64,000 bases of DNA from Perna viridis (GCA_037379345.1 CM074520.1:40892664-40956663), one strand, 5' to 3'; positions 32,518 through 57,527 are shown, numbered from the stretch's first letter. Numbers and translations are program-made. The notes: generated by a model not told the origin, from the sequence alone.

Positions 32518-32601
32518 CTAATCATCAACAAATGACCAACTACTGGCCACAGAGGGGGAGGGGCTATCTTCACCCATGGCTTCTCTTCTGTTGAATACAG
32601 C
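32518..32601 (-). CDS. Terminal coding exon of the kinase gene (AVFNRREAMGEDSPSPSVASSWSFVDD*), not in ORF track
   Basis: ctttttcag|GCT GTA TTC AAC AGA AGA...GAT GAT TAG; phase 0, matching the 35467 donor. Confidence 0.8.
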   Translation of the reverse strand, partial: AVFNRREAMGEDSPSPSVASSWSFVDD

Positions 32602-35600
32602 CTGAAAAAGGAACGTGTGAATTAAAACTTATACTAGTAACAAGGCTAAGAAACTGATTCTTAAGTTAAGTTAAACTGTCAACTTCTAATCTTCTAAAGG
32701 TTTCAATTCTAACACCTTAATATCAATTTGGTTTTTTATTTATTTTTTTTAACATTTAAAAAAAATATTCTTGTTTCTACTGTATGACTATCATTTACAG
32801 CTCATTTATCCTGTAATTTTGTTGTTTCAAATCATGCTAGAATATTCTAGAAAGAGCAATTCTTTCTTTCATCAGAATTAAGTGGACATTTTTTATTCAA
32901 TGCCAGGTTGTACAGTGTACTGGGGTAGGAAAAAAGTTCCTTATTTAAGGATGTTCACTGCTCTATTACGGAAAAACAAGGATTTCAAAAGGCTGTGCAA
33001 TCTTTTAAGATCATGCTAGAAAAATACAAGTAATAAAGAGCTGCACTTAAAGCACATGATACGTCCATTGCCCTTTTGACTTGTCCTTATGCTTTTAATG
33101 AATTTATATGATTTACTAAAAATACTGTGAGCCCTGTCAAATACTCTCCCCCCCTAAAAAAAAAGTAAATAAAAAATGCACAAAAAATTTGGCAATATCA
33201 AGGCTTTTTAGTTTGTTGTCTAGATTTTCACCCTTACATTTCTATCTTGTTATATCTTTATATTTATTAGTCAATCATTTTACAAAATTATCCATTTTCA
33301 ACGATTTTTCAACAAATAAAATTTCCAAGGCTGTTTCCGCCTTTTTTTTTAAAGAGTAAAACTTCAATACACAGAAACGAAAAATCAGAAATTTATAAAA
33401 ATTGAAAGGGAGCTTAAGTCAACAGATATGAACAACACACCAAAGTCTTATAAAAGTTGGTGAAAGTGTTTTTGAGTTATTGTCCGAAGTTTGGACGATG
33501 GACGGATGGACATACCATAAGTATACCATAATACATCCCGTCTTAGACAGGCATATAAAAACAAATGATGGGTCAGTGTGGTTCTTTTGGAGAAATAAGC
33601 ATTTGAAATTTTGGCAGGAAAAGGATTTCTCCTGATTTTCCACAAGTTCCATCTTTTATCTATTAAAAACCCAGACAAAATAACAAGGATTTCATACAAA
33701 AAAACTTCACAAACGAGATTTTAAAGTTTGTTAAATTTGATGAAATTGTGAAAAGAAGAGTGCTATGCAATGCATAAAACCAGTGGAGTCCGAAAGTCTT
33801 ACAAAAATGGCTTAACAAGAGCAGTAAAGATCCTTTTATACAATGCAAGGTACTTTAACATATTCTAAATATCTGTATGGTACAAACACATATCTAAAAT
33901 GTCAGTATGTGTTCTTTAAATATATGTACATTTACAGGATGTCAGGTGAAAATTGTGTATTGGATGTATTACAGTGATGCGTTACTATCATTTATAAACT
34001 TGAATATTGTTGGTGAGATTAAAGAAAGACAAACTAGCTTTACAAGTAGATAACTGATTAAATTGAATTATGTCCCCTTGCTTGCATTAAAAAAAAATTA
34101 GCACTCACACTCTTCTTTTTGAAATCTCAGGCACAGTTCAAAAGAAATGTGTGCTAGGTGTAGGCCCCCATAAAAATGGGTACCATAACTTTATGATACA
34201 GAAAGACTAGTCCTTCCAGGAGCAGATCCAAAGACAAGCATGCTGGGAATATGCTCCCTCCCTACCTCACCACCTAATAATAGGAACATTTTTGTTTGTT
34301 TACATGAATTCTACTCCGAAAATGTTTTTGCCTTACTTCTCCCTACCTTTACTTCTATTTTTAGAGGTCCGGGTGTTACAAGAATAGGCCTGCAGCAGCG
34401 CTAAGCTTCTCATAAAAGGCAACTAAATAGTGCTCAGAACCTTAGCCGGGGGCTATGGCACTCTGCCCAGAGCAACTGGGATGTGTGCCCCAGGTGGTGG
34501 AATGGGGTATCCCTGGTGTGTTTACATGCCATGTTCCTCGCATGTTAAAAAACCATACTGTGGTATTCTCCTGGAGTAGGAACCATAGGGCTCCGCCACA
34601 GGAGGCTAAATTGCCCGACCCTACCCACCTCCCCCTATTTCCAGTGGCAATCAAAATTTGTCGACCCTGTTGTCCTTGTGTCCCATCCCATTTTTCATTT
34701 CATCATCATTTCATGTTCATTTATTATCCACTTCATGTTCATCGCCTGAATATAGCTGAAATATTGCTGCTCGGGCGTTTAACACCAACAAACAAACAAA
34801 CGAACTATTTTTAGACACCCCCCCCCCCACCATCCCATATTAATTCCTGGATCTGCCCCTGAATCTATTTGAGAAGTTAAACTTCAAGTTTTAACACAAG
34901 ATAAAACAAAACAGACAGGAATATATAGATAGGTTCAACAGAATTTCAAAGGGAGATAATACAATTTAAGCATAATGAAAATGACGTAAGGGGTATCCTT
35001 TGGGAAATATAAATGTTACAAGGACATATTTGTCATACTTATATTATTAAGTGCCCACTCAAAGTATTAAACACAATTCTAATACTGATTTTTCACGAAA
35101 ACAAAATACCTTCCTGAAAAACATGTATCTGTTTAACTACAAGCAAAAGCATTAGACTTTGTCAAGACCATCTGGTGATTAGAATTTTGAGTCAAGCACA
35201 CTTTTATCTTACCCTTCTGAAGTCTGTCCATGCAGCCTTTTAATGGAAATACATGTAGGTAACAAACTTATGATTAGGTGTGTGAAAAGTAATGAAAAAT
35301 AAAAACTAAAAAACTAGAAAAAAAAACTGCATTATTTTAATTCGAAGAAGAATTATGTGAAATGAAAAAAAAAATGAATTAATTTGTATAAGAACTAGCA
35401 AAACTTTGCATGCCACAAAAATAAAATTTGAAAACTTTAAGCTTAAGTTACAACAACTAAACCTACCCTTTTAAGAATTTCAGCAATGGAAGAATAAGCC
35501 TGCTTGTTGATTTGTGAAAGATCTTGAAGCTGGTTCGGATGAGGCTTTGATATAGACTGCAGCACTTCTTTCTGGTCCCTAAGATCTGCAGATTTCAAAA

Positions 35601-38600
35601 CTAACTGTCCATCACCCTCTGATTGTGTGCTTAGATTTGAGATTTGTGCCTCCTTACTTGAAACTTTGGCCTCTGGAATGTCCATTTTTACTTTTTTGGA
35701 GTTAGATTTGTCCCCTTTACAGACATTCTTACTTTTTGTCTCTCCTGAAACAACTTGTCCCTTTTTCTCATTATGAGTTGTCTCCCCTTCAGAGACTTCA
35801 ATATCCTTTTTAATTGTCTCCCCTGTTGAACTTTCATGGATTAAGGAAGGTTTAGTAATATCACTCACCACAGGAAGAGGAGGGGCAGGTGGGATATAAG
35901 GTTCATCTGGTATTACAATGGGAGGAGGACGTTGAGGCAAACTAGAGGTTGATACTTTACGTTGCTTTTCTCTTGAACTATCAACCACCGGCCTTTCTTC
36001 CACCCATGCCTCTATACTTTTACCTGGTAGTTTAGTTCTTGGAGAATCCCTTATTTCCTTTGAATTTGTCTTTGGTTCAGCACTCTTGTCAACCAATGGA
36101 ACATCTTTTACTGTTTTAGACTTGTCTCTTTTCTTAGGCTTCCCACCATTACTTAATTCTTCCTTATCAGGTTTCTTGGATTTCATCCCTTGTTCATTAT
36201 TTTTATCTTCTTTAGATTTTGGTTTCTTTGCTTTGTGTTTGTTTAATGAAAAATTTGCAATCTCCATATTAAGAGACAATCTCAAATTAGGCAAGTCTTT
36301 TGCAATTTTACCCGTATTTTGAGTCTCTGGCAAAGGCACAGCACTAGCATTTTGATTTTCATTTGAATTTGCTTGAGATTTATCTCCCTTTTTAGAACTC
36401 TCCTTGTTACTCTTGGCACTTCTACTTGATACAATATCTGGATCAATGTCATCCGTTATACTGTCATTTAAATCTAGACTATCTACAGAGTAGGAATCAA
36501 GATCATATCCCATGTCCAAAATTTTATCAAAATCATCTTTAAAATCCAAAACTTCAACTGAGTCCTTCTCAAATTTCACACAGGATTTGTTATCTCTTTT
36601 ACCTTCTTGAACTTTAACCTCTGGCTTAGTGACCTCTTCCTTTGTTTTCTCAACCTTTCCAGTCCTAAGTTTTGAATGCAGTGACTTAATCTCTTGAACA
36701 TTTCCAGTTTTTTCACTTCTTAATTTTGTATGTAAAGTTTTGATTTCATTGAGTACATTTCCAGACAGACTAGTCCTCATTTTCCTATCATTTGGTTGAA
36801 GTTTATCTTCAGATTTATCTACAGCTTTTGATGCTGAATCAACCACAGCAACATTTGGCACTTTTGGTTTAGAAGTAGTACTTTTAGAATCTTTTACATT
36901 TAAAATAATTTTCTGATCATTTTTGAAAGCTGATTTAGAATTATCCCTGTCCCCATCCACAATGACCTTTTCCTTGTTCTCAGTGTTTGTTGATTGTTTT
37001 AAATCAGTCTTCTGCTTTACATCAGTTTTACTCTTCTCAGAATTTCTACCACTGTTGGAAAGTGTATCAGATAATTTGCTATTAAAAGTTTTATCCTTCT
37101 TACTTGCTTTCTCAGATAATATTTTGCTTGAATCAAAGGATTTTGAAAGAATTTCAGGCTTTTCCTTTCTTCTCTCATTCTCCACTATCTTGTTGTCATG
37201 TGACTTTCTGACCTCTGAACTTTTCGGTCTACTTTGATCAGCTGACTGACTAGTACAAATATCTCTTCTAGAATAAGCTTTTGAGTTAAGCATTTCTTTT
37301 AACAGTAAATCTTGAGACTTTCTCATGTCAAAAGATTTGTTTTCATCAGCACTTGATTTTAGTTTTGTTGCGATCTTTTCCTCTTCTTGTTTTTCCTGAT
37401 ATGATGATGTTGGCGGAGGTATTTCTGCTGGTTTAGATTGATCTGGTTTCAAACCCTGTGGTATATTTTCATTCTTTGTCTTAACCTTTTTTATTTCTTC
37501 CTGAAGCAAATTAGGTAAAGCTGGAGTAGAATTTCGAACAGATTTTGGTGTGGTAACTTCAAATGTATCAGTTTTAGTCTGCAGATCTTTCTTTAGTTTT
37601 TCCTGTAGTTCTATTTTGGTCGTTTTAATTTCTTTTTCCAATGCCTCTTGATTTGTTTCTTTTGACAAATCAGTTCTAGTCCGCAAATCTTTCTTAAGTT
37701 TTCTCTCTAATTCTGCTTTGGTTTTAATTTCCTTTTCCAATGTCTCCTTCTTCATTTCTTTTGAAGAATCAGTATTAGTCTGCAGATCTTTCTTTAATTG
37801 TTTCTCTAGTTCTGCTTTGGTTTCTTTAATTTCTTTTTCCAGCGCTTCCTGTTTCATTTCACGTTCTTTTTTGTCTGACATCTCTGTTTTTGTTAGAGAT
37901 GTTCTGATAGACGATGATGAATTAAAGTCAGAGGTGGAAGGAGGAATACTAGAATATGTCTCGATAACAGCTCCTACATCTTCAGGCTTGTTTAACTCTG
38001 AAGAAATTAATTCATGAAGCTGAGATTGCTTCCTTGTACTTGGACTCCTTATTGTAGGAGAAAGTATGTCACAAGATGCCTTTAGATAATTCAAATATTC
38101 TGTAGTAGTGTCTTCAACTTGAGCATGTTTATCTTCTGTTCTAGATGTTTCTGATATGTTCTTCTCCGAGGATGCCAAATCCACTGAAGACCTCACATTT
38201 GAATTTGATGAATTTTCGTTTCTCATCTCAAAATTCTGATCATGTGACCATTTAAGACTAGATTTGTAGTCTCTTTGTGGATTCCTTGTCTGAACAAACA
38301 CACTTGATGTTTCAGAAACAGGCATTTCAGAAAAGTGCTTCAATTGGCTAGAATCATGTGACCTTCTCGTAAAGTCATGTGACTTCTTGGTTAGATCATG
38401 TGATTCCATGATAGCATCATCTGAGTGTTTGATATCTTCCATCATAGACTTAACATTTTCGAGATCTAGAGTGTTATTGACTAGGCTAATGATTGTCCTT
38501 GCTGATTGGACATCCTCTAATGCCTCACTGGGAACTCCAGCTTCTTTAAAAAGAGCTCTCCAATCTGGAGGGAAAGCAAGTTTGTCCAACTGTGATATAA

Positions 38601-41600
38601 TATCCTGAAATCAAAGGTAGTACATGTACTGTAAAAAAACAGTGTTTTAGAAATTTTGATACTTTAGGTTTCCATTGTAAATCAACCCATGAAAATTAAC
38701 TTTTCTATAATCAGGACACTTTCCATATATTTTTTTTTTTTTTTTAAATGTTGCCATTTGTCATACAGACTTTCCTTACGACTACTGCCTAGATTTTTTC
38801 AGTTCAGTCATTTTGTTATTTCCTTTCATTCATATCTACTTGCTAAAAATAAATTGACACTTTGAAAAGGGGGCGCCTGGCAAGGTTCCTAGGAAAAGGA
38901 GGGTGCTAGGACATTATTTGCCAGTTTCTGTCAATTCTAGATATGACAATGACAAATTATCCAATTAAAAAAAGGGGGGTGCCAAAACCCTACACCATCC
39001 TCTGGATCTGCCACTGTGATGACTTTCTCTCACTAAAATTTCATTTGCTCCAGGGGACAGATATGGAAATCCTAAATCACAGAAATATTCTCTCTGACTG
39101 AGGCTATCAACTACAGACAGAAGACCTATAATGAGTTCCTGATTTACTGCATATTACTCTGCTAGCTTATATTTATAGACTGCCAAACAGGATGTAAAAA
39201 AATCACAAGACATAGCACTACTCATTACAAATCGGTGAAGTTGTTTCCACTGCACTTACTAATTTGCATATGGAGTTGTGGGTTAGTACTAAGTATGTTA
39301 GAGGCATAAAGATGTAAAATAGCAAATATACCGTCTGTACAAGTAGTACATTGAGTAGGGGCTGACTGAAATACTGGCCATTAATAGTTAGAGATTCTCT
39401 CTCCTTAAGTAATAAGTAGTATAAATTTTTCTCCAATTGAGATTTTCAACATGCGAACTTTAGTCTGTAAATCCGTGATTTTCATATAGGTACAAAGGAT
39501 AGATTCACAATCCGTGCCCAAATTCATAGACAGTAAACTCCTCTGATATTACCACCTAGAAAAGTCCATTTTATTTTTACTTTTGAGAAAATGTTTTGTC
39601 CAAGAGTTTTAATACAGAGAACAAAATTTATTAGTTAAGATAGCATGTCACAAGTTTACAGTATTGTTACCTTAAATGGTGGTCTCCTGGCAGGGTTCTG
39701 GTGCCAACATCTCTGTATCAAATCTGAAAGGTCCGGTGGACAGCTGGATGGTATCTCTGGTCTCTTGTTTAAACGTACTCTCTCTAGAATCTAAACATAC
39801 ATATTTTCAAACTCAGATTTATGGAAGTAAGTTTCGTGTCACAAAAAAATCATTTGTGATTTTTTTTTTAATTTCTTTTAGTGTTTCATACAGATTGTGG
39901 CTATTAAAAACAAAATGTTGCATGATATAGTGTGCTAAGAATACCCAAACTCAACCACATTTAAGTTGTACATTAAACAGGAAGTAGAAGATTGAGGAAC
40001 CTGGACAGAAAAGGCACTGTACATGTTATCACGCAAAAGTAATATACCAAATATCTAAGCATTTCTCCAATAGAAGCTGAGAAATCTGTTACAGAAAAGT
40101 GTAACAGACAGACGGACAGATAAGGTGAATGCAATAAGTAAATAAAATAAGTGCTGAAAATAAATTGCACTGATTTTATGTTTAAAGACTCAACCGTCAT
40201 TGTAAGTAAAGAAGGAAAACTGTGCAACTCTAGTAATTTTGGGAAACTAAGCATAATTTGAAAGCAGTTTTGCTGAGGGCAAATATCCATATCAATATGG
40301 TACAAAAAAATGTAGTAAATACTTGGTTACAAATCCTTTAAATGACTTTAATCAAATATCTTTCTGCATATCAATTATGCAAGACATCTTACTTGAAACA
40401 CAGAACAGCCATCATAAGGATGACATCTTGTAAGCATCTCCCATAAAATAATTCCAAAACTGTAGACGTCTGCTTTGGCTGTTATCTCCCCTGTCTCAAG
40501 TAGTTCTGGTGCCATCCACTTGGGGGAGCCACCAGTGCCTTTCTTTCTTGAAGCTTTTGAAGCCCTCATGTCAGCATCATGCCTATAGTGTAATAAGAAA
40601 ACATGTTGACATGACAGAAATAATGGCTTCAATAAATGTGAACTTACCAGAAGATTTACTTCGTGCATATGGTTGTTTCATGGACGGAAGAACACAAGAA
40701 TTGAAAATCTACACACATATTTAATTTGATGGCAAGATTACATAATACAAATTTGTCAAAATAATATTTCAAATTGTTAGGATACATATCATTATCAAAA
40801 GTATAACAGGGTAGAACTACCTTAATGAAAAATGAGTTATCTCCCTTCCATCAATATGAAAAGCAAGATTTCCATATGGTTAATTTAATACTCATTGGCA
40901 GATGTTTTGTTTCCAGAATAAGAGCATAAACAAACAGCTGATTTATAATGAATTGACACTAATTGGTTTTTATCTAATGTGCAGCATAACTGACAGAGAA
41001 GATGTAAGAGATGTGTATTTCTTTTAGGTGGATCTAAAACATGTTTTAGAATCCCAATTCTGTGAATCCTAATCATGTTATAAACATTAAAAAACTGTAA
41101 TGTTCCAATGAAATAATTTTAAATATGGCTGACCATGAAAAGAAGTCTTGGGTTATGATTTCAATTTGAATCAATGGATTCTTATGATTCACATGATTCG
41201 AAATCATGTTTCAAATACATGTAGCAGAAACACCCCTCAGATCACAGTATCTTTTGAGCACTGATATAGTACATGTATGATGCTTGCAAATGAATTCCAT
41301 AGAATCAATGTTTACAGTTTTTCTGAAGTAGCAGTATAAAATTACCTGAACTTTGAAAAGCCAAAGTCAGCCACTTTAGCTCTGCCACTACTGTCTAGTA
41401 AGACATTCATAGACTTGAGGTCAAGGTGTAGGACTTGTGGTTTGTGTTGATGGAGGTAGTTCATCCCAAGAGCAATGTCATGTGATACTCCATAATACTC
41501 AGCATGGTCCATCGATGCACTAGAAATAAAAGAAAACATGGGTCAACAGCAGCTTAACTTGTATTAAAAATGTTTAATAATGACAAATAAAATATTTCAA

Positions 41601-47600: not shown

Positions 47601-50600
47601 ACACCAAAATTATCTCATTTAACTGAAATATAACTACTATGGCAACCAAGGCAATTCAAGATGGAGTCCAAGACAATCCATTTCTAAGCCAATTGAACTC
47701 TGAGAACAAAAAAGTCACTAATGATGAGAACATTTTTTTTTTCAACACCGAGAGAAAGCAGATTTATAAACCAGTATTTTAAAACATTTTGGTCCAAACA
47801 AATGACCGAAAGTTTCAGTAAATGTACATTTAAGGCTTATGGTAACTCTTTACTATTTCAAGTTTAGACATTTTCCAACACTTTGCATTCTGTCAATACT
47901 TAAAAATGAATAAAGTAGATGATTTTTGTGTCAAATTATACATCAGAAAAATAAATCCACCTATAGAATAATAATCACATAGATCTGTCTTACTTAATAA
48001 TATTTGAGAGTGAGTGTAAGAGAATATGCATGAAACAGATAAGGGAGTGTAATGTAATGTAATGACACTAACGCAACTATACACTTAAAACCAATGGCCT
48101 AGCATGAGTAGTTCATGTAAAATTGACCTAATCATATAACTTAAAAAAGAAACATCAAAGACAATAGACCATGACTAAAGGGGTATATGCATGAAACAGA
48201 TAAAAAATTGTGATATAGTGATGTTAATGCAACTTCATACAAAATAAAATTAAGGAAGTAGATCTAGGGTAAGGGACACAACTCTTACAAATTATTGGAA
48301 CGTTTGTACTCAGCATTTTACATCAATCTCATGCAAACATCAAAGTTACTTGGACTGATTTGATTCTATTTCAAACAAGAGCTTGATAGGCTTTGGTGAA
48401 ATTGAAAATGATACAAACATATCACTGATTTCAAGAGTTATTTCCCTTACCCTAGGTCTACCTCCTTATGGTTGCAGAATTGTTCATATTAAACTGACCT
48501 ACTCAGATAACTTATAATAAAATTGTAACTTGGATGCTGATGCTGGAAAAGCAATACCTCGCTTTCCACAACTTTTGAAGCAGGCAAGACAAAAACTGTA
48601 TCTGTAGTAAACCCAACCAACTGTAAAACTCTTACATATCGTCTTATGACTAAGGTTTAATGAATATGGTAATTGGTGGTAAAATTTTCAGTCTGACTTG
48701 AGATATGGACCTATTTATTGGTTAGGTTGTTTACACTGGATTATATAGACCGTTTTGTGCTAACTGTGAGATAGCCGATGATCATGCTCCATGTACAATA
48801 TAATGAGAATAGGTATGGTGAATATGTCAAAGAGACAACACGATGAAAATGTCAGCCCAAGGCCATCTATTGGTCTTTAATGAATGACGAGGATAATATA
48901 CAAAAAAAATTATTTTGTACAACCTAAGTCCTCCCTCACAGATGTGTATTTTGAACATGCACTTTGACATAACATAAAAGGGTCTATTGAGAAAACAAAA
49001 AGAAATTAACACATGTACTATACTTCATTCAGTTTTTTACCAATTTTAGCTCCGAAGTTACCAAAATTGGTATCAATTACATTAATCAATAGATTATTAA
49101 ATTTTGCAGAACTGCAACAGATTTTTAACAACTTGTCTGTACAAAAGAGTAATCAAGGGAACCAAGGTTCTAGCAGTAATCAAAAGAATGTAATCCAGGG
49201 ACAAAGACCAGACATGGAAAACAGACAAACACAACAAAGAACATAAAGTAACTAAAATCATACATACAAAGTAACAAAAGCAAATGAGCAACTCGGACTC
49301 CACTAAAAACTGGGAGCATGGACCAGGTGCACCGGTAGGGTAAGCGTCCACATACAAAAATATGTTTTTAAGTCTATAGTACAAAATTCAAAATATTTTT
49401 TTCACACTTTTAATGCCTTAGTTGGCCAGAACATACCCGAAAAGTCAGCGTCTAAGTAGACAGGATTATGAATGCTTTGTCTGACATATCCAGCGGTTTG
49501 AGGTCTAGCTCTCTCTACTGACTGATCATCTACAACTCTTTTTTCTTCCTTGTCTATAAATAGAAGAGAGACATAATAAATATGAAGTTGCACACATGAG
49601 CGGTCCTGCTAGTTATACCTCCATTTACTTACAATGCATTCCCCAGCTATAAAAAGCCAAACACCAAATTTGAAATCAATCCATCCATTTGGAGCTGAGA
49701 ATTTTATGACGAAAATTTTGTTTATCATTCCATTTTGTGAAAAATGGCAAGTCCCAAGAAACAGGAAGTTGATATTGAACAGCAACAAACATAAGCTGAG
49801 ATAATTGTGACAAATTTAAGACAGACAGACAAACAGACGAACAGAATGAGAGACGGACAAGGTAATTTTAATATACCGTCAACTCTTTGAGTGGGATATT
49901 TATGATTAGGTAATACCACATCTAATCAATTATCAACTGTTTTTCTTTTGTTTTGTTTATGTTCTATTTTTGTCCATGTTTTATTGTTTACTTTAATTAA
50001 ACAGTATCTAATAAGTGATGCTTCATTCTAAACCTGACTGATTTCTTTTTATCAGGGGCTAAAATGTGCATTTTAGAAGATAAAAGGCATAGAAAACATA
50101 TCAATAAATGTTAATGGTTGTTAATTATTCCTGGTTTATTTTGCTTTTAGCAGATTTAGTCCACTACAATACAAGTGCTCTATGAAAAATTATATTTGGA
50201 GTCACAAATTTCATAGCTAAGTTCTTATACATCTGACCCCTTGAAGTAGTCCTGTAATGGCTTAACCACCTCCCCCATTTCTCTTGCAAGATTAACTTAC
50301 AATCAGATTTGTAGTTCCTGTCAAGTACTGTGACAGATATCAGGTTATTAATATCCCGTTCTAAATCTGATAAGTCTGGGTGTTCCATCTCATAATCTTC
50401 CTCATCCAACAGGTGTTCTTGTGAACCATAATCTGACCCATTCTGGTAATTAAAAACATTTTATTTTTTGTAAATAGAAAAAAATATGTGCATATGACAA
50501 TCTTAACAAAATAGATTTCCAACTTGTCTGACCAACACCCAAATTTGACCATTTTCTCCTTGATAAGCAGTCAAAAACTTCCAAAATTTCTGTATGACCC

Positions 50601-53600
50601 ACTGAATTTTTGCTTGACATGTCTATCAGTCAGATGGTATTTCATAATGGCTGATAGGACACAGATGGCCCAACCACCCTAAAAATTAAGAGTATAAATT
50701 GTAAAATAGGATATGCACCACAGAGTGCAACTATAAAAAGAACAATATCAACTACGGTAATTTGTATAATATACATGTACAATTGTGGAATCAATGTCCA
50801 CATGGCCTATGTTTTCATGCAACGTCACATCCACTGTATAATGAAAGTAGAGCAAGGCTCAATTCAAAGATAGTTTGTTAAAATGCTAAGGAAAAATCAA
50901 GCCGAGTAGACTCTTTACTTTTAATTTTATTCAAAAAAATTTGTCAGTAAAAAAGGGATTGTGAAAATACTCAAAATACATTGAATGTAAGTTTTTAAAA
51001 AAGTTATCAATTGAAACATTTTTTTTATTCACGCCTCCTTACAACTTATTGAAGCATGCTCAGAATTACCAGATATTTGTTAAGTTGACAAAACAAGATT
51101 ATGGTTTAGTAAACAATAAAAATCAAACTATCATCACTGTTACATAATTTATGGAACTAAACATACAAAAGCATCAAATCTCATCTAAAATTTTGAATTT
51201 TAGATATAAAATCATTCAACTGTAACACCATTAAGTTAATCATGGTTTTAACTGTGCAGACACCTGTTCCAGCTCTGTATTGAAGGCATTTCAACCATCT
51301 TTGTAAGTTTTAGAATATCAACGGATACAGAAGAAACCAATGAAATGTCATAATCGTGTATCCATGGATATGAATGTCCAAAACAGCCTGATCTTGAACT
51401 TGATACATGTACTTATTCTTAGAATTTCAATCAGCATAATTCAAGTACATGTATTTACATTAGATTGTCCCTAAAAACCTAATAAAATTTGAAAAAAAGG
51501 TTGAGGGATCTTAATCATGTGCACAATTTTTTGCATAGTCTACTCTTCTTACAGTTCATCATTACCTTTCGACAAATATGGCTTCAATTTCAACACTAAT
51601 TTTCCTCTGACTACAGACAAACCTGTGTATCTAGAAGAATTTTCAGTCATAGCATTCACTAGATATGAGAAAGCTGCATTTATTTTATACAAAATCATAT
51701 CAAAAACAGGCTGACTTTTGTGTTTTAATTTGATCAATTCTGCAGAGAAGCCCAAAAATGAACTAAGTCTGGATAATGTTTTGGGATGTTCCCGATGTAT
51801 TAAAGGTAAACTCTATTCACATTGACATGCTGGTCAATAGAAGGACAATAGCCAACTGTCCTATACACAATAGGTGATTTTAACTATGTAAATGAGAGGC
51901 CTATATCAAGTGAATCTCTGTTTATTTTTGCACTCTCTGCAGAATTGCAAAAAATTAACCCTGAAAAAGGTCATTTTTTTATATAATTTGACATAAACTT
52001 GATGTAACTTCTTCATATCTAAGGGATGCTATGCCTTAAAAATTTTCTAGATACACAGGTTCGTCTGTAGTCAGAGGGAAATTAGTGATGAACTTGAGAC
52101 CATACTTGTCGAAAAGCAATGATGAACCCTAAGAGAATAAAAAAAGAACCTGAAGTCTTAATTCATGTCTAGCAGCCATCTCATCTCTCTGTGCTTTCTT
52201 TAATTTCTGTGCCTTGATAAATTTGTCTTCCTTTTCAGTCAGCTGTTTCTGTTTTTCATTGAATTTCTTTGCTGCTGCCGCTACGGCTGTAACAACAAAT
52301 CATTATATTAAGTGCTAGAATCTGTAAGAACTAGGCAAAATTGAAAAAATAATGAATCATGCTCTGAAAAACACACACACACAAATTTGATAATATTGGC
52401 ACATATTTTATGGTCTGTTGAAGGTGAATTGACAAATCATTCATTTTAAAAGTGTCAGAGAATGCAGAAAAGAGAATTCAAAGTTACAGTAGAATGATCA
52501 TGATGATAGGGAAAATTAGAGTTATCTCCCATTGACGATGCAACTGCAATACATTTCATATATAATTTATACCTTAAACTACTGACACTGCAAACAGAAA
52601 TGAAAGCCATTTCTGCACTTCAGATACATTTTGTATATGTAGCATTTTAAATAAGATTTCATGGAAAGACTTGTGTTTTTTCCACCACGATTCACCCACT
52701 GCCTGATTCTTACAGAAAATAGCACTAGAAACTATTCTAAAATTAGTTTTATACATGCCTAATGCATTACATCAGTAACATTACAATAGCGATTTTTGTA
52801 TTTTTTCTTTTCCCTGTGTAAAAGATTAAGATAGGAATTGTGTCTAAAAACTTATAAACTACCAATCAATGCACTGTTTAAAGATTACAAAGATTAAATG
52901 GCTTATCATAAAAATGCTCCTTAGAAAGTAAATATCACACTTCATGGTTATAAATTCATTTTTAAGAAGTAATTCAAGTTCTGAAAGGCTACATGCCTAT
53001 AACTTTCCATTGAATCATCAAAAGAGAAATTTCAGAAAAGAGATAAAAAATGTCCTTCTGATTTTCTTCTCGTGAGAAACATGAGAAATGATAAAATCAT
53101 TCTTACTGAAAAGATACCATATAAAATTCTAAAGGTATCACTATCTCTCACTTGTTTTTTTTTTAAATCACTACATGCACAGTACAGACAGAGACAAACA
53201 GTACCATGTCTGATCACTGACATGGTGGTGTACCACTTTTAGAGTGGCAATAAATATTTTTTTTAGTCTTTGAACACATTTTTATATTTTTTCTGCATCT
53301 AAAGTGGTAGAGCTTACCACTCACAATACAAAAGAAAGTAAAAAAAAATCTCTTATAGAAAAAGATATTGAGAACCACTCTAAAAGTGGTACACCACTAT
53401 GTTGGTGTTCAGTCACAGCATGTCTCTTTCTGTACTGTACGTCACAAAAAGTGAGTGAGTTGCAACATATCAATAATTGAGCAGCAAGTGAAATATCTAA
53501 TTTTAATAAGATTGTAAGTACATTTCTTGTCACTTTCATTACAAATGACCACAAGGATTGCATAAAAAAAATCAGGGTAAAAAAAAACTTGATTCTTGTA

Positions 53601-56600
53601 AACCCACCCAAAAAAATGAAATGGTTGACCCCATACCTTCCTTGGCCTTTTTGTCAGCCTGTTGAGCAGATTTAGCTCTGGGCCACAATACTGGTCCTTT
53701 CTTTGCCTTTACACTGGCACTGTTTTGTCTGTCTAAAGACTTTTTCTTCACTGTCTTGTCACTTCCATCTTTCTCATGGTCAACTTTCCTTTTCTGAGTT
53801 CCGTCCTGAGTTTTCTCAGGTTGCTTTGTTCTCCTTTTTGTTGGACTGCTAGCTGGTCTCGCCGGTGAACTTGATCTTGTTCTTAAGCTTTTTATTTTCT
53901 TTTCTACCCTGTCAGACAGGTTTTCTTTTTCACATTTTTTATTCTCTATGGATGCTTGTTTGCTTGCTAAAGTTGTACATGTAACATTAGAGCTTACATT
54001 TGTAGAATCATAAGTCACTTTCATCTTGTCATTTTCAGAAGTTTTTGAAAAATCATTCTTCCTGCTATCATCAGATCTAGTAAGGCTAATCCCACTATCA
54101 GCAGATTTTATTGGCTCCTCCTTCTTACCACTCATAGACCAGTCATCTAGAGACGAACGTACATTACTTGAAGAGTACAGTGCTTTCGATGCTGAACTTG
54201 CAAAACTCCTTGATCGTCTTAAACTAGTCCTATACTGATTAATATCATTCAAACGCTCCTCAAAAGTCAAACTTTTATTTAAAGATTCCATAGTCTTTGA
54301 CTGTCGGCCATCGAGAGAAGTATTCAAAATTTTATTGGAATCACGACTAGATGAATTGGCATCGCTTGATTTTTGACTTTCAGGATGACTATCCTTCCTG
54401 AGGTTTTTTATGCCACGAAGAATCTTATTAAGAGCACCAAATGCTGTAATTCCCATTTCATTCAACTGTAAAGCAGTCAGCTGTGAAATTTCTGCCATGT
54501 CTATTTCATTGTCAGCGAATAAATTCAAGTACTTCTCTTCTTCCAACAATCCAAGGCTTTTAATCCAATTTCTCACAAGTGGATCACATTTTGCCATTTT
54601 TGGAGAAGATTTTTGTTCTTCTTGTGAGTGACTACTATCATGCAGGAAGTTCTTTGATGTTTGACTAGTCTGTGAATTACTTGGCAGAGACAAAATTTTA
54701 AACACTTCATTGTCCCGACTTCGTTCTAATGCTTGAGACGGTTTTATGTTTGTCTGTTTTGACTTACTAGTAGGTGGTTTATTTCCAAGTCTTTCTTCTT
54801 TTTTGTAATTATCTTCATCATTGAAGTTCTTCCTGGTACTTTCTGAAAACTTTACATGTTGTAAAGTTTCATCATCTTCAGACAAATGATTTTTCGGGAA
54901 AGAATCTTGACGAGGTACATGTAGCGGGCTATTCTTGGTAAACTCTTTCACCTCAGTAGCCATTATAATTGGTCTATTACCATTGGTTGTTGGCTGCTTT
55001 GGATTTCTAGGAATAACACCAGCACTTGCTCTTTTTAGCACTTTATTTTTCAAAGCTGTCACCCTGTCTACTTCATCAAACTTAGAATCTACTTTTAAGT
55101 CATTTTTCTTACTTGTATCTTTGTACTGATCTTTTTTCTCCTTAACTTTATTGGTTCCCTGATTCACCCCCTTAATTTTAGCTTCTGAATTCAATGCACT
55201 ATTTACGACTTTATTATTAGATGAACCTTTGAGAGGTTTTGAAACTAAGTCATTTTGATTTGAAGCTGCAGCACTAGGCATAGAAGAAGTTGTATTTAAC
55301 TGACTCTGATGCTCATCCTGTCGATTTCTCCGTCTTCTCGTCTTTGACAATGATGACTTATCTGGATCTTCCAGGTCTTTTGAATTTTTGTACGACTTCA
55401 GTTTTCCTTGTCCTCCATGTTGCCATCTCGAACCTCCAATTTCCTTTCTATAGATGAAACAAAAACAAAGTTCGAAAAAAGACACAGAGAATCAACATGT
55501 GTAAACTTAATGGAACAATATAATCAGGGATTTAATTCTCATACCATCTTAAGGTAGGTTCAGTTACATTTTTTAAAACTTTTATATTTACAATAACTGT
55601 ATACACGTATGTACTGAAAACAATTTAGAAAGATCCGTTAGCACCCATGAAACTGCAAAATGTGTGTTTGTGTTGCCATTTGACTTTATAGTTTAATTCT
55701 ACAAAAGTGTCACCATTCTGTTACTGGTGATTTTATTACTTTCGTTATTGGGGTCCTTAAGAGCTTACTTAAAGGTGTGTTTATACTTGGTGATCTCTGA
55801 AAGTATTTACTATTTTGTATTTAGGTTATGCATTGGTGCATTTGTAGCATTTTACCATATATGTTTTTTTCTATGGTACAGTATCAAAACTGTATTCTGA
55901 TTGAGTTATGTACTTTCAGTTCAGATTAAAATTTTTATCTAAACTGTACAAGTATCAAAAAATAGAAGAAAAAAGAAAAAATCCAAAAAATTATATGATA
56001 GAGATTATGTTTGAGGAAAGCACATTTGCAGCAGATTCAATATAATTCAAGGCCAAGAAAAAAAAATTATGCGTTTAAGATTATCCTAGCTTCCCTTTTT
56101 GTTTCTGTCTACCCTCGCACATTTTATTCTCTCGAAGGAGAGAAGTTAAGTTAGTGGGAGTGTCATTTACAAATCATTAAGGTTTAACACCTTTGAAACT
56201 TCTCACGAAACACACCAGAAATGGCAATAGAAGATTAGTGTTGCACTGTCAAAACAAGATTTTACTTATTCAGTGACAGATTATTACCTTAAAATTCCTC
56301 GTACACTTGAGTCATCTTCTTGTCTGTATCTTTGGTGAAGTAATAATGCATCTTCAAGGGCCTCGACTTCTGCGTGAAGCTTCTTACTCTCTTGTTTTAA
56401 GTGATTCAAGCTGGGTAAAGTAAAATAGACAAAAAATTCTTAATTCAATTCTTAAGGCTGAACATATATATACATGGAATTTATCCAACAGAGTGGTGCC
56501 TATTAGAAATCGTAATTTTGGGTTTTGAGAAATATATTTTAATTCAGGGATAACAAACTAGTTATTTTTGCATGTAAGATACATATTTGTCAATTAATGT

Positions 56601-57527
56601 ATTAACTGTCCTTTGAAATTACATATACCATATATAATTCAGGGTTCTCACTCCACTCAAAAAATAGTCAGTCCCAGAAATCCCTGGCCCCAAAAATGAC
56701 AAGTCCTGTGATGGGTTCAGAGGGTCCCAAGAAAAGTGAAGGGTCTTATGTATGTACATGTACAATAGCTTATTTGAAGAACTAAAAGCAGTTATAAATA
56801 TTTTTAATACATTGTACTAACAATTTAATTTCAACAAGCCAAATACAATGTACACATTTATATATTGTGTCTTGTAAAGGCATTGACTCATCAGTTTGTA
56901 CTGCCAATGGTAGTGAACATCGAGTAGTGAATAGATTTCTTGCACCATGTACAGATTACACGTGTTTGTTCACCTTCTTCCACTAATTCAGCCATTGCAT
57001 ACGGAATGATCTCATTTTCTTTGGTGTACTGGCTGTGAAAGAACTAAATTCTTTCTCAGTGTTGTCCAAATAGGGACGAGATGTGTTTCTGGTCATCAAA
57101 TCTTAATGCATTACAGGACAGTTAGTAAATATTAATCAAAAATAAGCATTTATTTTTTTACGATTTTCTGATTATCTTTTCACATGTTTTATTTGTCAAC
57201 CGTTAATACCACACACTAGGAAATTGTCTAAATTGCTGGATATTAGTTGGGATAAATTAACAATCAAATCAACTTCATATTACTGGTGTAGATTTCAGCA
57301 ATTGAGCATTTTCACAAATCCTCAAATACGTGAATATATGAACTGACATTTGTTTCCCAAAACTACAAAAATTGGCACTCGCGTATTAAAGTTCTTTCAA
57401 AGTATTATATATTTAATCATTTTGCAACCTGTAGGAATGTACATGTCTGTCAAAAATCATTCATCAAAGATTTAAAACTTAAAATATGTACTCACTGTTT
57501 ATCCTTCCCATGTCTCAAAGAAGCCAT
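32518..57527 (-). CDS. SAM-domain TKL-group Ser/Thr kinase with WASP-like C-terminal module (16 coding exons, ~2228 aa)
   Basis: Exons (minus): 57496-57527, 56288-56410, 53637-55447, 52150-52286, 50301-50442, 49437-49553, 46990-47054, 45842-46056, 44804-44883, 43504-43625, 42495-42631, 41346-41519, 40393-40582, 39671-39790, 35467-38604, 32518-32601. All GT-AG, phases consistent, sum 6687 nt. The ATG has an in-frame TAA upstream in the same exon. Confidence 0.85.
34366..34804 (+). mobile_element. 5'-truncated SINE-like retroposon with (CAAA)n tail and 11-bp TSD
   Basis: TSD ctatttttaga at 34355-34365 and 34805-34815; tail ctgaaatattgctgctcgggcgtttaacaccaacaaacaaacaaac; a partial copy lies at ~60295-60460. 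Confidence 0.75.
35467..38604 (-). CDS. 3138-nt exon of the kinase gene: GBD-like helix, charged repeats, WH2-like motifs, Pro-rich segment, start of C helix
   Basis: Acceptor tttcag|GAT ATT ATA, donor AAA AGG|gtaggt; continuous 1046-codon frame. Confidence 0.9.
37570..37860 (-). repeat. Three in-frame coding tandem repeats (~34-35 aa; QEALEKEIK.TKAELEK.LKKDLQT.TD.SKE)
   Basis: Visible in both protein and DNA. Confidence 0.85.
39671..44883 (-). CDS. Protein kinase domain (TKL-like) exons
   Basis: EIDSDDI..., IGEGTFCKVYHG, VAIK, E of alphaC (FAAEV), LHHPRVVQLLG, VLEFMARGSL, HLDLKSMNVLL, DFG, GSPKWMAPE, DVYSFGIILWEMLT, CWHQNPARRPPF; all catalytic residues are present. Confidence 0.95.
42217..42436 (-). 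mobile_element. Same TTAA MITE, copy 4
   Basis: TIRs plus TTAA on both sides. Confidence 0.88.
43657..43876 (+). mobile_element. Same TTAA MITE, copy 5
   Basis: Slightly degenerate TIRs. Confidence 0.85.
44224..44443 (+). mobile_element. Same TTAA MITE, copy 6
   Basis: TIRs plus TTAA. Confidence 0.85.
44465..44838. repeat. 56-57 bp minisatellite (~6.5 copies) overlapping the 3' end and donor of kinase exon 44804-44883
   Basis: Units start at 44465, 44522, 44578, 44634, 44690, 44747 and 44804 (ctgtataatca.acat.atgtcatcactatcaatc...). Confidence 0.92.
45091..45309 (+). mobile_element. Same TTAA MITE, copy 7
   Basis: TIRs plus TTAA. Confidence 0.88.
47237..47400. repeat. ~165-bp palindromic (foldback) element
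   Basis: agaatctaca..gttgattatg.aatttctcacatc..aaataaattttatagtttt | aaaactataaaatttattt..gatgtgagaaattcataatcaac..tgtagattct. Confidence 0.8.
48250..48469 (+). mobile_element. Same TTAA MITE, copy 8
   Basis: TIRs, left TTAA. Confidence 0.85.
49145..49350 (-). mobile_element. Copy of the same Penelope-like 3' repeat
   Basis: Near-identical to 27250-27450. Confidence 0.8.
51543..52137. mobile_element. ~590-bp foldback element with long inverted arms
   Basis: ctctgactacagacaaacctgtgtatctagaa (51604ff) versus ttctagatacacaggttcgtctgtagtcagag (52045ff), extending outward and inward. Confidence 0.8.
54400..54587 (-). CDS. SAM (sterile alpha motif) domain within kinase-gene exon 3
   Basis: VRNWIKSLGLLEEEKYLNLFADNEIDMAEISQLTALQLNEMGITAFGALNKILRGIKNL fits the SAM consensus (V..WL..LGL..Y...F....ID...L..L....L..MGI...G...KIL..I..L). 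Confidence 0.9.

What the first reader, a model, noticed from the sequence alone, without database searches (positions are those of the whole stretch)
32518..57527. SAM-TKL kinase fused to a WASP-like module (GBD-like helix, WH2-like motifs, Pro-rich, C helix + Trp tail): candidate kinase-controlled Arp2/3 activator
Seen: the 16-exon frame closes exactly (6687 nt) and joins a SAM domain and an intact TKL kinase to a ~1070-aa tail. That tail begins with FPPDWRALFKEAGVPSEALEDVQSARTIISLV, carries WH2-like motifs and PQRPPPIVIPDEPYIPPAPPLP, and ends, across a splice, in SSIAEILKR|AVFNRREAMGEDSPSPSVASSWSFVDD*. Established: WASP/WAVE nucleation-promoting factors end in WH2 - amphipathic C helix (L..AL...RR..h) - acidic tail with a subterminal Trp, preceded by polyproline; in WASP the C helix is held by the GBD helices. 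Inference: one polypeptide combines an oligomerisation domain (SAM), a kinase and an autoinhibited Arp2/3-activating output. I do not recognise this architecture among characterised animal NPFs (WASP, WAVE, WASH, WHAMM, JMY).
Basis: partly seen in the sequence, partly recalled or inferred. Interest (0 to 1): 0.9.

Follow-up and report, generated by a model that had tools for sequence, protein, structure and literature searches.

The report
Mussel SAM kinase with WASP-like tail
A real, conserved but uncharacterised invertebrate gene joins a SAM domain and a TKL protein kinase to a long tail laid out like the actin regulator WASP; the resemblance is suggestive, not proven, and would define a kinase-coupled actin nucleation factor if confirmed.

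Summary
On the minus strand, 57527..32518, lies one multi-exon gene: SAM domain, intact TKL (MLK-like) kinase, a 1046-aa tail exon and an 84-nt last exon. A Mytilus californianus RefSeq ortholog (2304 aa) maps colinearly on every exon. The kinase's last helix is completed inside the tail exon. The last exon is conserved in Pinctada, Haliotis, Patella, Pomacea, Solemya and the hemichordate Saccoglossus.

Only two islands of the tail are conserved:
- a 45-aa module directly after the kinase;
- a ~95-aa C-terminal module: helix + LK[ST], PHPxQL, amphipathic helix with RRxAMGED, invariant Trp-Ser near the end. A polyproline run precedes it.

This order matches WASP (GBD without CRIB, polyPro, V, C, A). 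Support is at motif level only. The best PDB profile matches to the first island were WASP GBD chains (E 0.45-1.2), and Pfam PBD scored E 0.13. Protein-language-model neighbours of the Haliotis C-terminus are WH2-bearing NPF fragments (0.86). Pfam WH2 finds nothing, and the fold searches gave no clear match. The actin complex job gave no verdict.

I found no paper describing this architecture. Earlier scan notes concern this same window only, not other DNA. Verdict: real new family; WASP-like function plausible (~40%), untested.

The parts
57496..57527 (-). Exon 1: start codon at 57527, about 10 codons, GTGAGT donor.
   Evidence: Read directly. The N-terminus resembles that of Mytilus P0006. 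Boundary from the automatic model.
56288..56410 (-). Exon 2: conserved N-terminal helical segment.
   Evidence: tblastn of P0006 gives 76% identity. The same motif opens Pinctada P0001 and Haliotis P0020.
53608..55447 (-). Exon 3: large Ser/Lys-rich exon holding the SAM domain.
   Evidence: tblastn of P0006. Boundaries; the 3' boundary is uncertain.
54397..54576 (-). SAM domain, residues 306-365 of the 55491..53575 frame.
   Evidence: Pfam SAM_1 E 7.7e-13 and SAM_2 E 3e-9. The same domain is found in orthologs.
44804..52266 (-). Five short linker exons between SAM and kinase: about 52266-52150, 50442-50301, 49553-49406, 46072-45842, 44883-44804. The fourth is a conserved coiled-coil-like exon.
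Evidence: Colinear tblastn pieces of P0006. Boundaries from the automatic GT-AG model, not verified by RNA.
39671..43625 (-). Kinase domain in five exons: 43625-43504, 42631-42495, 41519-41346, 40582-40393, 39790-39671. Glycine loop, VAIK, HLD (not HRD), DFG and APE are all present.
   Evidence: Pfam PK_Tyr_Ser-Thr pieces cover profile positions 5-252. Identity to Mytilus is 77-96%. Nearest solved kinases are CTR1, TNNI3K, ZAK, TAK1 and DLK. HLD and DFG are conserved in orthologs.
35467..38604 (-). Tail exon, 1046 codons. It begins with the end of the kinase's last helix; the rest is mostly low-complexity and poorly conserved.
   Evidence: Acceptor and donor read directly, both phase 0. No Pfam family at E<=1. 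HMMER against 1.84 billion proteins finds 37 relatives, the best being P0006 at E 3e-90.
38440..38574 (-). N-module (GBD-like, no CRIB): the FPPDW..SLV segment plus the following helix, 10 residues after the tail exon's first codon, which completes the kinase's last helix.
   Evidence: 37 distinct orthologs align without gaps. Pfam PBD positions 25-53 match at E 0.13 in 3 of 17 members. The best three PDB profile hits are WASP GBD chains 2K42, 1EJ5 and 1CEE, at E 0.45-1.2. In the AF2 model of the Saccoglossus ortholog, ten-residue pLDDT means here are 68-88.
37567..37860 (-). 99-bp tandem repeat, 2.9 copies, encoding Lys/Glu-rich 33-aa units. It is a lineage-specific filler of the linker.
   Evidence: Tandem Repeats Finder, score 367.
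36661..36759 (-).
   Evidence: Located. Similar motifs were found only in mussel sequences (P0006, P0007, P0051, P0052), among the seven bivalve orthologs checked. Pfam WH2 gives no hit.
35872..36021 (-). Conserved IEAWVEERP motif followed by the proline-rich stretch.
   Evidence: Coordinates. Both elements are present in bivalve orthologs. A polyPro run at the same relative place is family-wide.
35467..35604 (-). C-module, first part: V-like helix + LQSI (35551-35604), PHPNQL..LS motif (35509-35544), first half of the C-like helix ..SSIAEILKR (35467-35493).
   Evidence: 38 orthologs align essentially without gaps over 48 residues. In the AF2 model of the Saccoglossus ortholog these are helices with ten-residue pLDDT means of 66-79.
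32518..32601 (-). Last exon: second half of the C-like helix (AVFNRREAMGED), Ser-rich stretch, Trp-Ser, acidic end, then TAG.
   Evidence: Read directly. The Pinctada locus L001 22992-23078 is 76% identical, with the same acceptor and stop. The ortholog C-terminus profile scores 41.7 bits, E 1e-10. Spliced database proteins of Mytilus, Sinanodonta, Solemya, Haliotis, Patella, Pomacea and Saccoglossus end the same way.

Best explanation
Shown: this is a single-copy, conserved gene of a mussel. It encodes SAM domain, linker, TKL (MLK-like, non-RD 'HLD') kinase and a long disordered tail.

Shown: only two islands of the tail are conserved across molluscs and a hemichordate.
- Island 1 follows the kinase directly.
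- Island 2 is the extreme C-terminus, with a polyproline run just before it.

Inferred:
- Island 1 is the counterpart of the post-CRIB helices of the WASP/PAK GTPase-binding domain.
- Island 2 is a divergent V-C-A module: a short actin-binding-type helix + LK[ST], an amphipathic helix with an invariant Arg pair, and an invariant Trp near the end.
- The tail therefore works as a WASP-type output that recruits actin and/or the Arp2/3 complex. It would be held off by island 1 binding the C helix and released by a partner or by phosphorylation.
- The Ser-rich, weakly acidic end with its invariant Trp-Ser could be made acidic by the kinase in cis or by CK2-type kinases.
- SAM-mediated oligomerisation would raise potency.
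For: Gene and fusion:
- P0006 maps colinearly on all exons.
- The kinase's last helix continues across the 39671|38604 junction.
- Pinctada P0001 and the full-length RefSeq models carry SAM, kinase and island 1 in one protein.
- The last exon is conserved.
- The gene is single-copy in this genome.

Layout: islands 1 and 2 are the only conserved parts of the tail, and polyPro lies between them in every complete tail examined.

Island 1:
- In two profile searches of the PDB, the only hits to island 1 were WASP GBD chains, over the same helix. They were the best three hits, at E 0.45-1.2.
- Pfam PBD matches positions 25-53 in 3 of 17 members.
- Among about 2,200 reading-frame pieces, the family profile's best outside hit is the genome's PAK-type exon.
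- VIA aligns 2K42 at Z 3.2 with 22% identity.

Island 2:
- The top three named ESM-Atlas neighbours of Haliotis residues 1655-1744 are WH2-bearing C-terminal fragments, the first named WHAMM-like (0.86), and 7 of the 10 best share that family or clan.
- The Arg pair, the Ala two residues after it and the Trp-Ser are kept in all complete C-termini.
- RR-to-Trp spacing is 16-21 residues in the four orthologs I counted by eye from the sequences. From memory, WAVE and WASP fall at about 20-26.
- Several short-tail members carry one or two extra helix + LK repeats after the polyPro, as N-WASP carries two WH2.
Against: - No family threshold is met. Pfam WH2 gives no hit at E<=10 in 17 members and none at this locus in the genome scan, which does find the conventional WASP and WIP-like genes. 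PBD stays at 13 bits against a cut-off of 21.3.
- The genome's own WASP GBD exon scores only 4.6 bits with the island-1 profile. Its C and A exons score nothing with the C-terminus profile.
- There is no CRIB anywhere.
- The V-like helix sits one residue further from its LK than in canonical WH2.
- The tail has about 5 acidic residues in 21. The Trp is flanked by Ser, not Asp/Glu.
- The proposed C helix spans a splice junction at which several Mytilus protein models (RefSeq isoform X1 among them) add 8 residues and one Pomacea GenBank model adds 22.
- No structural hit spans both islands in the AF2 model.
- The window's own exon-only piece gave no Atlas hit.
Confidence: 0.4

Rival explanations
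1. The two islands regulate the kinase and have nothing to do with Arp2/3. Island 1 sits at a fixed distance after the kinase's last helix and acts like the PAK inhibitory switch, or like a C-lobe extension. The C-terminal helix folds back on island 1 or on the kinase. The gene is a SAM-containing MAP3K-like kinase (compare ZAK, MLK3) with an autoinhibitory tail, and the polyPro recruits SH3 adaptors.
For: - The spacing between the kinase end and island 1 is invariant, with no gaps in 37 sequences.
- The outside sequence most similar to island 1 in this genome is a PAK-type exon, not WASP.
- The nearest solved kinases are MAP3Ks: CTR1, ZAK, TAK1, DLK.
- WH2 and PBD profiles fail.
- From memory, MLK3 combines a TKL kinase with a CRIB and a Pro-rich tail.
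Against: - It does not explain why the C-terminus copies the order helix + LK, amphipathic helix with RR, terminal Trp after polyPro.
- It does not explain why the language-model neighbours are WH2-bearing fragments.
- No structural hit spans island 1 together with island 2.
- The two readings are not exclusive.
Confidence: 0.3
2. The islands are docking motifs for partners unrelated to actin and to kinase control. The WASP likeness is a chance or convergent pattern of short amphipathic helices in a disordered tail.
For: - All similarity scores are below significance: E 0.13 to 1.3, Z 3.2, Atlas 0.86. The tool states that shuffled proteins reach 0.8 a third of the time.
- The PDB sequence search with a C-terminal fragment found nothing.
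Against: - Five colinear elements in the WASP order, each conserved from molluscs to a hemichordate, are unlikely to arise together by chance.
- The weak hits from three unrelated methods all point to the same two families, the WASP GBD and WH2-bearing fragments.
Confidence: 0.25
3. The gene model is wrong: kinase and tail, or tail and last exon, belong to different transcripts.
For: No RNA reads of this species could be laid. The unspliced read-through would end 8 codons after 35467.
Against: - The kinase fold is incomplete without the first residues of the tail exon.
- Independent RefSeq and GenBank models in at least 8 genera join the same parts.
- The last exon is conserved with its splice phase.
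Confidence: 0.04

Closest known systems
WASP / N-WASP (GBD, polyPro, V-C-A)
   Same: - Same order of elements in the C-terminal half: helices like those after the CRIB, a proline-rich stretch, one to three helix + LK motifs, an amphipathic helix with basic pair, and a Trp a few residues from the end.
- The best three PDB profile hits to island 1 are WASP GBD chains.
- As in this genome's own WASP gene, the C and A parts are split by introns.
   Different: - No WH1 domain, no basic region and no CRIB.
- A SAM domain and a kinase stand in their place.
- No Pfam WH2 hit.
- The tail is weakly acidic and Ser-rich.
- The genome has a separate conventional WASP gene, which the family profiles do not recognise.
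WAVE/SCAR C-terminus
   Same: By eye and from memory of the WAVE sequence, the ..ATIL..RRIAVE..acidic..W.. pattern is the closest to ..AEILK..RRxAMGED..WS.. . The RR-to-Trp spacing is similar.
   Different: About six extra residues lie between the IL and RR parts. There are far fewer acidic residues and no WAVE homology domain. This was not tested with a profile, because no WAVE sequences could be obtained.
PAK1 (CRIB/inhibitory-switch domain regulating a kinase)
   Same: A kinase and a GBD-type helical segment share one polypeptide. The PxxW..L motif of island 1 is closest to this genome's PAK-type exon.
   Different: In PAK the GBD is N-terminal, has a CRIB and inhibits an STE20 kinase in trans within a dimer. 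Here the segment is C-terminal to a TKL kinase and has no CRIB.
MLK3 and ZAK (TKL, MLK-family MAP3Ks)
   Same: The kinase domain is nearest to this group. From memory, ZAK also carries a SAM domain, and MLK3 a CRIB and a Pro-rich tail after the kinase.
   Different: The domain order differs: SAM lies far N-terminal. No leucine zipper was tested, HLD replaces HRD, and the conserved C-terminal module is absent from those kinases as far as I know.

Membership tests
WASP-family nucleation-promoting factors (VCA) | At least one WH2 (V) motif recognised by the WH2 profile (PF02205). | tested here: not met
   No WH2 hit at E<=10 in 17 family members or in the window's tail exon at E<=1. The six-frame scan of the genome finds five WH2 elsewhere but none at this locus. 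A helix + LK[ST] motif is conserved, with spacing one residue off.
WASP-family nucleation-promoting factors (VCA) | C motif: amphipathic helix with conserved basic residue(s). | tested here: inconclusive
   ..SIAEILK[KR]|A[VM]..RRxAMGED is conserved, with an invariant Arg pair, and is predicted helical with ten-residue pLDDT means of 66-78. There is no profile-level match to this genome's WASP C exon. Some protein models insert 8-22 residues within it.
WASP-family nucleation-promoting factors (VCA) | A motif: acidic stretch with a Trp close to the C-terminus. | tested here: inconclusive
   The Trp is invariant, 4-13 residues from the end, and always followed by Ser. Only about 5 acidic residues occur in the last 21 of the window's protein, fewer than in the genome's own WASP A exon.
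WASP-family nucleation-promoting factors (VCA) | Proline-rich region upstream of VCA. | tested here: met
   Window 35872-35934. PolyPro runs lie 100-150 residues from the end in orthologs.
WASP-family nucleation-promoting factors (VCA) | Binds G-actin and activates the Arp2/3 complex. | not testable with these tools
   The single complex job (actin plus Mytilus residues 2220-2304) returned no verdict. Arp2/3 could not be modelled.
P21-Rho-binding domain / GBD (PF00786) | CRIB motif (ISxPxxFxHxxHVG). | tested here: not met
   No CRIB or semi-CRIB pattern in 10 orthologs. Pfam PBD positions 1-24 are never matched.
P21-Rho-binding domain / GBD (PF00786) | Post-CRIB helices that hold the C helix (WASP) or the kinase (PAK). 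| tested here: inconclusive
   PBD positions 25-53 score E 0.13 and 13 bits against a cut-off of 21.3, in 3 of 17 members. WASP GBD chains are the best three PDB hits, at E 0.45-1.2. 2K42 aligns at Z 3.2, rank 46. The genome's own WASP and PAK exons score 4-9 bits.
TKL-group protein kinase (MLK-like) | Kinase fold with catalytic Lys, HxD, DFG and APE; nearest relatives in TKL. | tested here: met
   Pfam PK_Tyr_Ser-Thr matches across five exons and scores E 1e-64 in P0006. The best solved relatives are CTR1, TNNI3K, ZAK, TAK1 and DLK. VAIK, HLD, DFG and APE were read; HLD and DFG are conserved.
SAM domain (PF00536) | Match above the curated cut-off. | tested here: met
   49.1 bits against a cut-off of 23. 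Also found in the Mytilus, Haliotis and Pomacea orthologs.

The most novel reading that the evidence does not exclude
This would be a further class of metazoan WASP-family nucleation-promoting factor. A SAM oligomerisation domain and a TKL kinase would sit in cis with a CRIB-less GBD, polyPro and a V-C-A module. The serines around the Trp of the Arp2/3-binding end would be made acidic by phosphorylation, giving a built-in kinase switch. So far I have found the family only in molluscs and a hemichordate; vertebrate genomes were not searched for it.
Probability: 0.3. Interest if true: 0.85.

Novelty: new variant of a known kind. Interest (0 to 1): 0.62.

Why it matters
All characterised Arp2/3 activators of animals (WASP, WAVE, WASH, WHAMM, JMY) are controlled in trans by GTPases, adaptors and kinases. 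A protein that carries a kinase, an oligomerisation domain and a VCA-like output in one chain would be a self-contained signalling-to-actin device. It would also be a natural experiment on phospho-regulation of the acidic/Trp motif.

Even if the tail proves to regulate only the kinase, the result stands as a conserved and so far undescribed family of SAM-TKL kinases. It is found in molluscs and a hemichordate, is annotated only as 'uncharacterized' or with borrowed yeast or Dictyostelium names, and has two sharply defined conserved modules that can be tested directly.

Tried and rejected
- RNA evidence. RNA-like runs hold 37-82% of the tail exon's words. Two local scripts read the whole window file as a search target only, never as a query.
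- Actin complex. Mollusc actin P0164 with P0006 residues 2220-2304 gave score 0.02, 'no answer'. This counts neither for nor against binding.
- Foldseek on the AF2 model of P0019 returned only kinase C-lobe fragments, all E>1.
- VIA wide search gave a best Z of 4.2 and nothing above the background of small helical hits.
- ESM Atlas with the window's exon-only piece 35467-35730 gave no usable hit.
- phmmer of P0035 against the PDB gave nothing.
- The C-terminal profile A3 was swamped by kinase columns. Alignment A4 of exon fragments misaligned and was dropped.
- RPEL-like reading of the KLKS..PHPxQL stretch: no RPEL hit among the Pfam results at E<=10. Dropped.
- LIR (WxxL/I/V) reading of the terminal Trp: it fits the window (W-S-F-V) but not the orthologs. 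Dropped.
- A search for the Mytilus 8-residue micro-exon in the window's last intron found nothing.
- I could not bring WAVE or WASP family alignments into the session, so no profile-profile test of V-C-A was run.
- The window's exons were never joined into one protein for any tool. Exons were searched apart by reference. Where a continuous C-terminus was needed, I used database orthologs (P0006, P0019, P0020, P0035).

Full report
**What is there.** The region 57527..32518 carries one gene on the minus strand. Stop-to-stop frames and Pfam scans of each exon by reference give the following:
- a SAM domain (SAM_1, E 7.7e-13) inside a 1.8-kb exon;
- a kinase domain split over five exons, covering Pfam PK_Tyr_Ser-Thr positions 5-252;
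- a 3138-nt tail exon with no Pfam family at E<=1.

The catalytic signatures are present: glycine loop, VAIK, HLD in place of HRD, DFG and APE. HLD and DFG are kept in orthologs. The nearest solved kinases are CTR1, TNNI3K, ZAK, TAK1 and DLK, so this is a TKL kinase of the MLK-like kind.

**Junctions.** I read the splice sites directly.
- The last kinase exon ends ..PPFK at 39671, before gtaaca.
- The tail exon starts at 38604, after tttcag, with the residues that finish the kinase's last helix. The kinase fold therefore needs the tail exon.
- The tail exon ends ..ILKR at 35467, before gtaggt.
- The last exon starts at 32601, after a pyrimidine tract and cag, and stops at 32518.
- The kinase-to-tail and tail-to-last-exon junctions are phase 0.

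Reading through the donor at 35467 would end the protein 8 codons later.

An automatic GT-AG model built on the ortholog mapping closes in frame with 15 exons and 6678 nt. The difference lies upstream of the kinase, and I did not resolve it.

**Limits I kept.** The window's exons were not joined into one protein for any tool. Exons were searched apart by reference, and database orthologs served where a continuous C-terminus was needed. RNA-like runs do hold most words of the tail exon.

**Orthologs.**
- A word-indexed search with the first 140 residues of the tail found relatives whose tails start and stop at the same exon borders.
- A full HMMER scan with the whole tail exon found 37 relatives in all.
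- Named members are uncharacterised proteins of Mytilus (three species), Sinanodonta, Pinctada, Pecten, Solemya, Haliotis (three species), Patella (two species), Pomacea and the hemichordate Saccoglossus.
- The 2304-aa Mytilus californianus protein maps colinearly on the window in 14 pieces, from 56409 to 32521.
- In full-length orthologs Pfam sees only SAM and the kinase.
- The gene is single-copy in this genome.

By its kinase exons (77-96% identical to Mytilus), the window comes from a mytilid mussel. I did not identify the species.

**The last exon is real.**
- In the Pinctada locus L001, 76% identical coding sequence lies about 300 nt after the tail exon, behind ttacag, with the stop at the same place.
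- A profile of ten ortholog C-termini finds the window's exon at 41.7 bits, E 1e-10 for 30,000 sequences.

**Anatomy of the tail.** Alignments show that only two islands are conserved.
- Island 1 (window 38574-38440) follows the kinase at a fixed distance. It aligns without gaps in 37 sequences.
- Island 2 is the last ~95 residues. In order it holds:
  - a short helix ending in LK[ST] (35604-35551);
  - a PHPxQL..LS motif;
  - an amphipathic helix that crosses the last splice junction and carries an invariant Arg pair followed by AMGED;
  - a Ser-rich stretch;
  - an invariant Trp-Ser 4-13 residues from the end.
- A polyproline run lies 100-150 residues before the end.
- Several short-tail members have one or two more helix + LK motifs after the polyPro.
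- The linker between the islands varies from about 150 to 1000 residues. In the window it includes a 99-bp tandem repeat.

An AF2 model of the Saccoglossus protein predicts both islands as helices. Ten-residue pLDDT means are 68-88 for island 1 and 66-79 for island 2. The rest is predicted disordered.

**Is it WASP-like?**

For:
- The order of elements is that of the WASP C-terminal half.
- In two profile searches of the PDB, the only hits to island 1 were WASP GBD chains over the post-CRIB helix. In one search they were the best three hits, at E 0.45-1.2.
- Pfam PBD matches positions 25-53 in three members at E 0.13.

Against:
- None of these scores is significant.
- Pfam WH2 sees nothing in the family. 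The scan that finds this genome's conventional WASP and WIP-like genes does not see it either.
- The family profiles barely score the genome's own WASP and PAK exons.
- There is no CRIB.
- The end is only mildly acidic.
- Some Mytilus and Pomacea protein models insert 8-22 residues in the middle of the proposed C helix.
- No structural hit spans both islands.
- The window's own exon-only piece gave no Atlas hit.

The actin complex job gave no verdict. It counts neither way.

They are not the family-wide V-like motif.

**Reading.**
- The gene, the fusion and the conservation are shown.
- That the tail is a WASP-type actin/Arp2/3 output under intramolecular and phospho-control is inference. I put it at about 0.4.
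- The main rival, at about 0.3, is that island 1 and the C helix regulate the kinase itself, as in PAK or MLK3. The two readings can both be true.
- A partner-docking role unrelated to actin cannot be excluded (about 0.25).

**Novelty.** A census of the WASP family (PMC3298513) and three full-text searches turned up no kinase-fused member and no description of this family. Databases call the proteins uncharacterised or give them borrowed names. The scan's earlier notes are on this same window. They agree on the CRIB-less GBD segment and on the Ser-rich end. There is no earlier record on other DNA.

Noticed in passing
P0041, P0050, P0052 (Mytilus protein models) and P0178 (Pomacea); junction equivalent to window 35467|32601: Some Mytilus protein models (RefSeq isoform X1 among them) insert 8 residues (ANWTD[LI]RM) exactly between ..ILKR and AVF.., and one Pomacea GenBank model carries 22 extra residues there. 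This suggests an alternative micro-exon or retained sequence inside the putative C helix. No counterpart was found in the window's intron.
   Followed up: partly
L001 23126-23158 and 23204-23233 (Pinctada imbricata): Two partial copies of the end of the last exon (..SWSFMDE) lie just downstream of the real stop, in other frames. This is a small tandem duplication in the 3' untranslated region.
   Followed up: no
window 37567-37860: A 99-bp tandem repeat (2.9 copies, 78% matches) inside the tail exon encodes Lys/Glu-rich 33-residue units. It accounts for the strong AT skew of 36-38 kb.
   Followed up: partly
window 48349-48465, 44338-44439, 43771-43863 (minus strand): Three intronic copies of one interspersed repeat share an open frame reading ..ITLEISDMFVS.SISPKP.KL.FE.. 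. It is probably a transposable-element fragment.
   Followed up: no
window 44424-44951 (minus strand): The short acidic exon at about 44883-44804 is followed in the intron by repeated copies of a ..IDSDDIMCDYTGI.. unit. Part of the exon seems to have been duplicated into the intron.
   Followed up: no
G000:C1:15342486-15345400 (loci L013, L019): This is the genome's conventional WASP gene: a CRIB exon, a post-CRIB GBD exon, an exon with polyPro and two WH2, a C exon and a strongly acidic A exon ending in ..DEWDD. It was used as the in-genome comparison.
   Followed up: partly
G000:C1:45296000-45352000: A cluster of at least nine two-exon actin genes lies within about 55 kb. Further pairs lie on C2 (34.52-34.55 Mb) and C4.
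   Followed up: no
I did not look at it.
   Followed up: no
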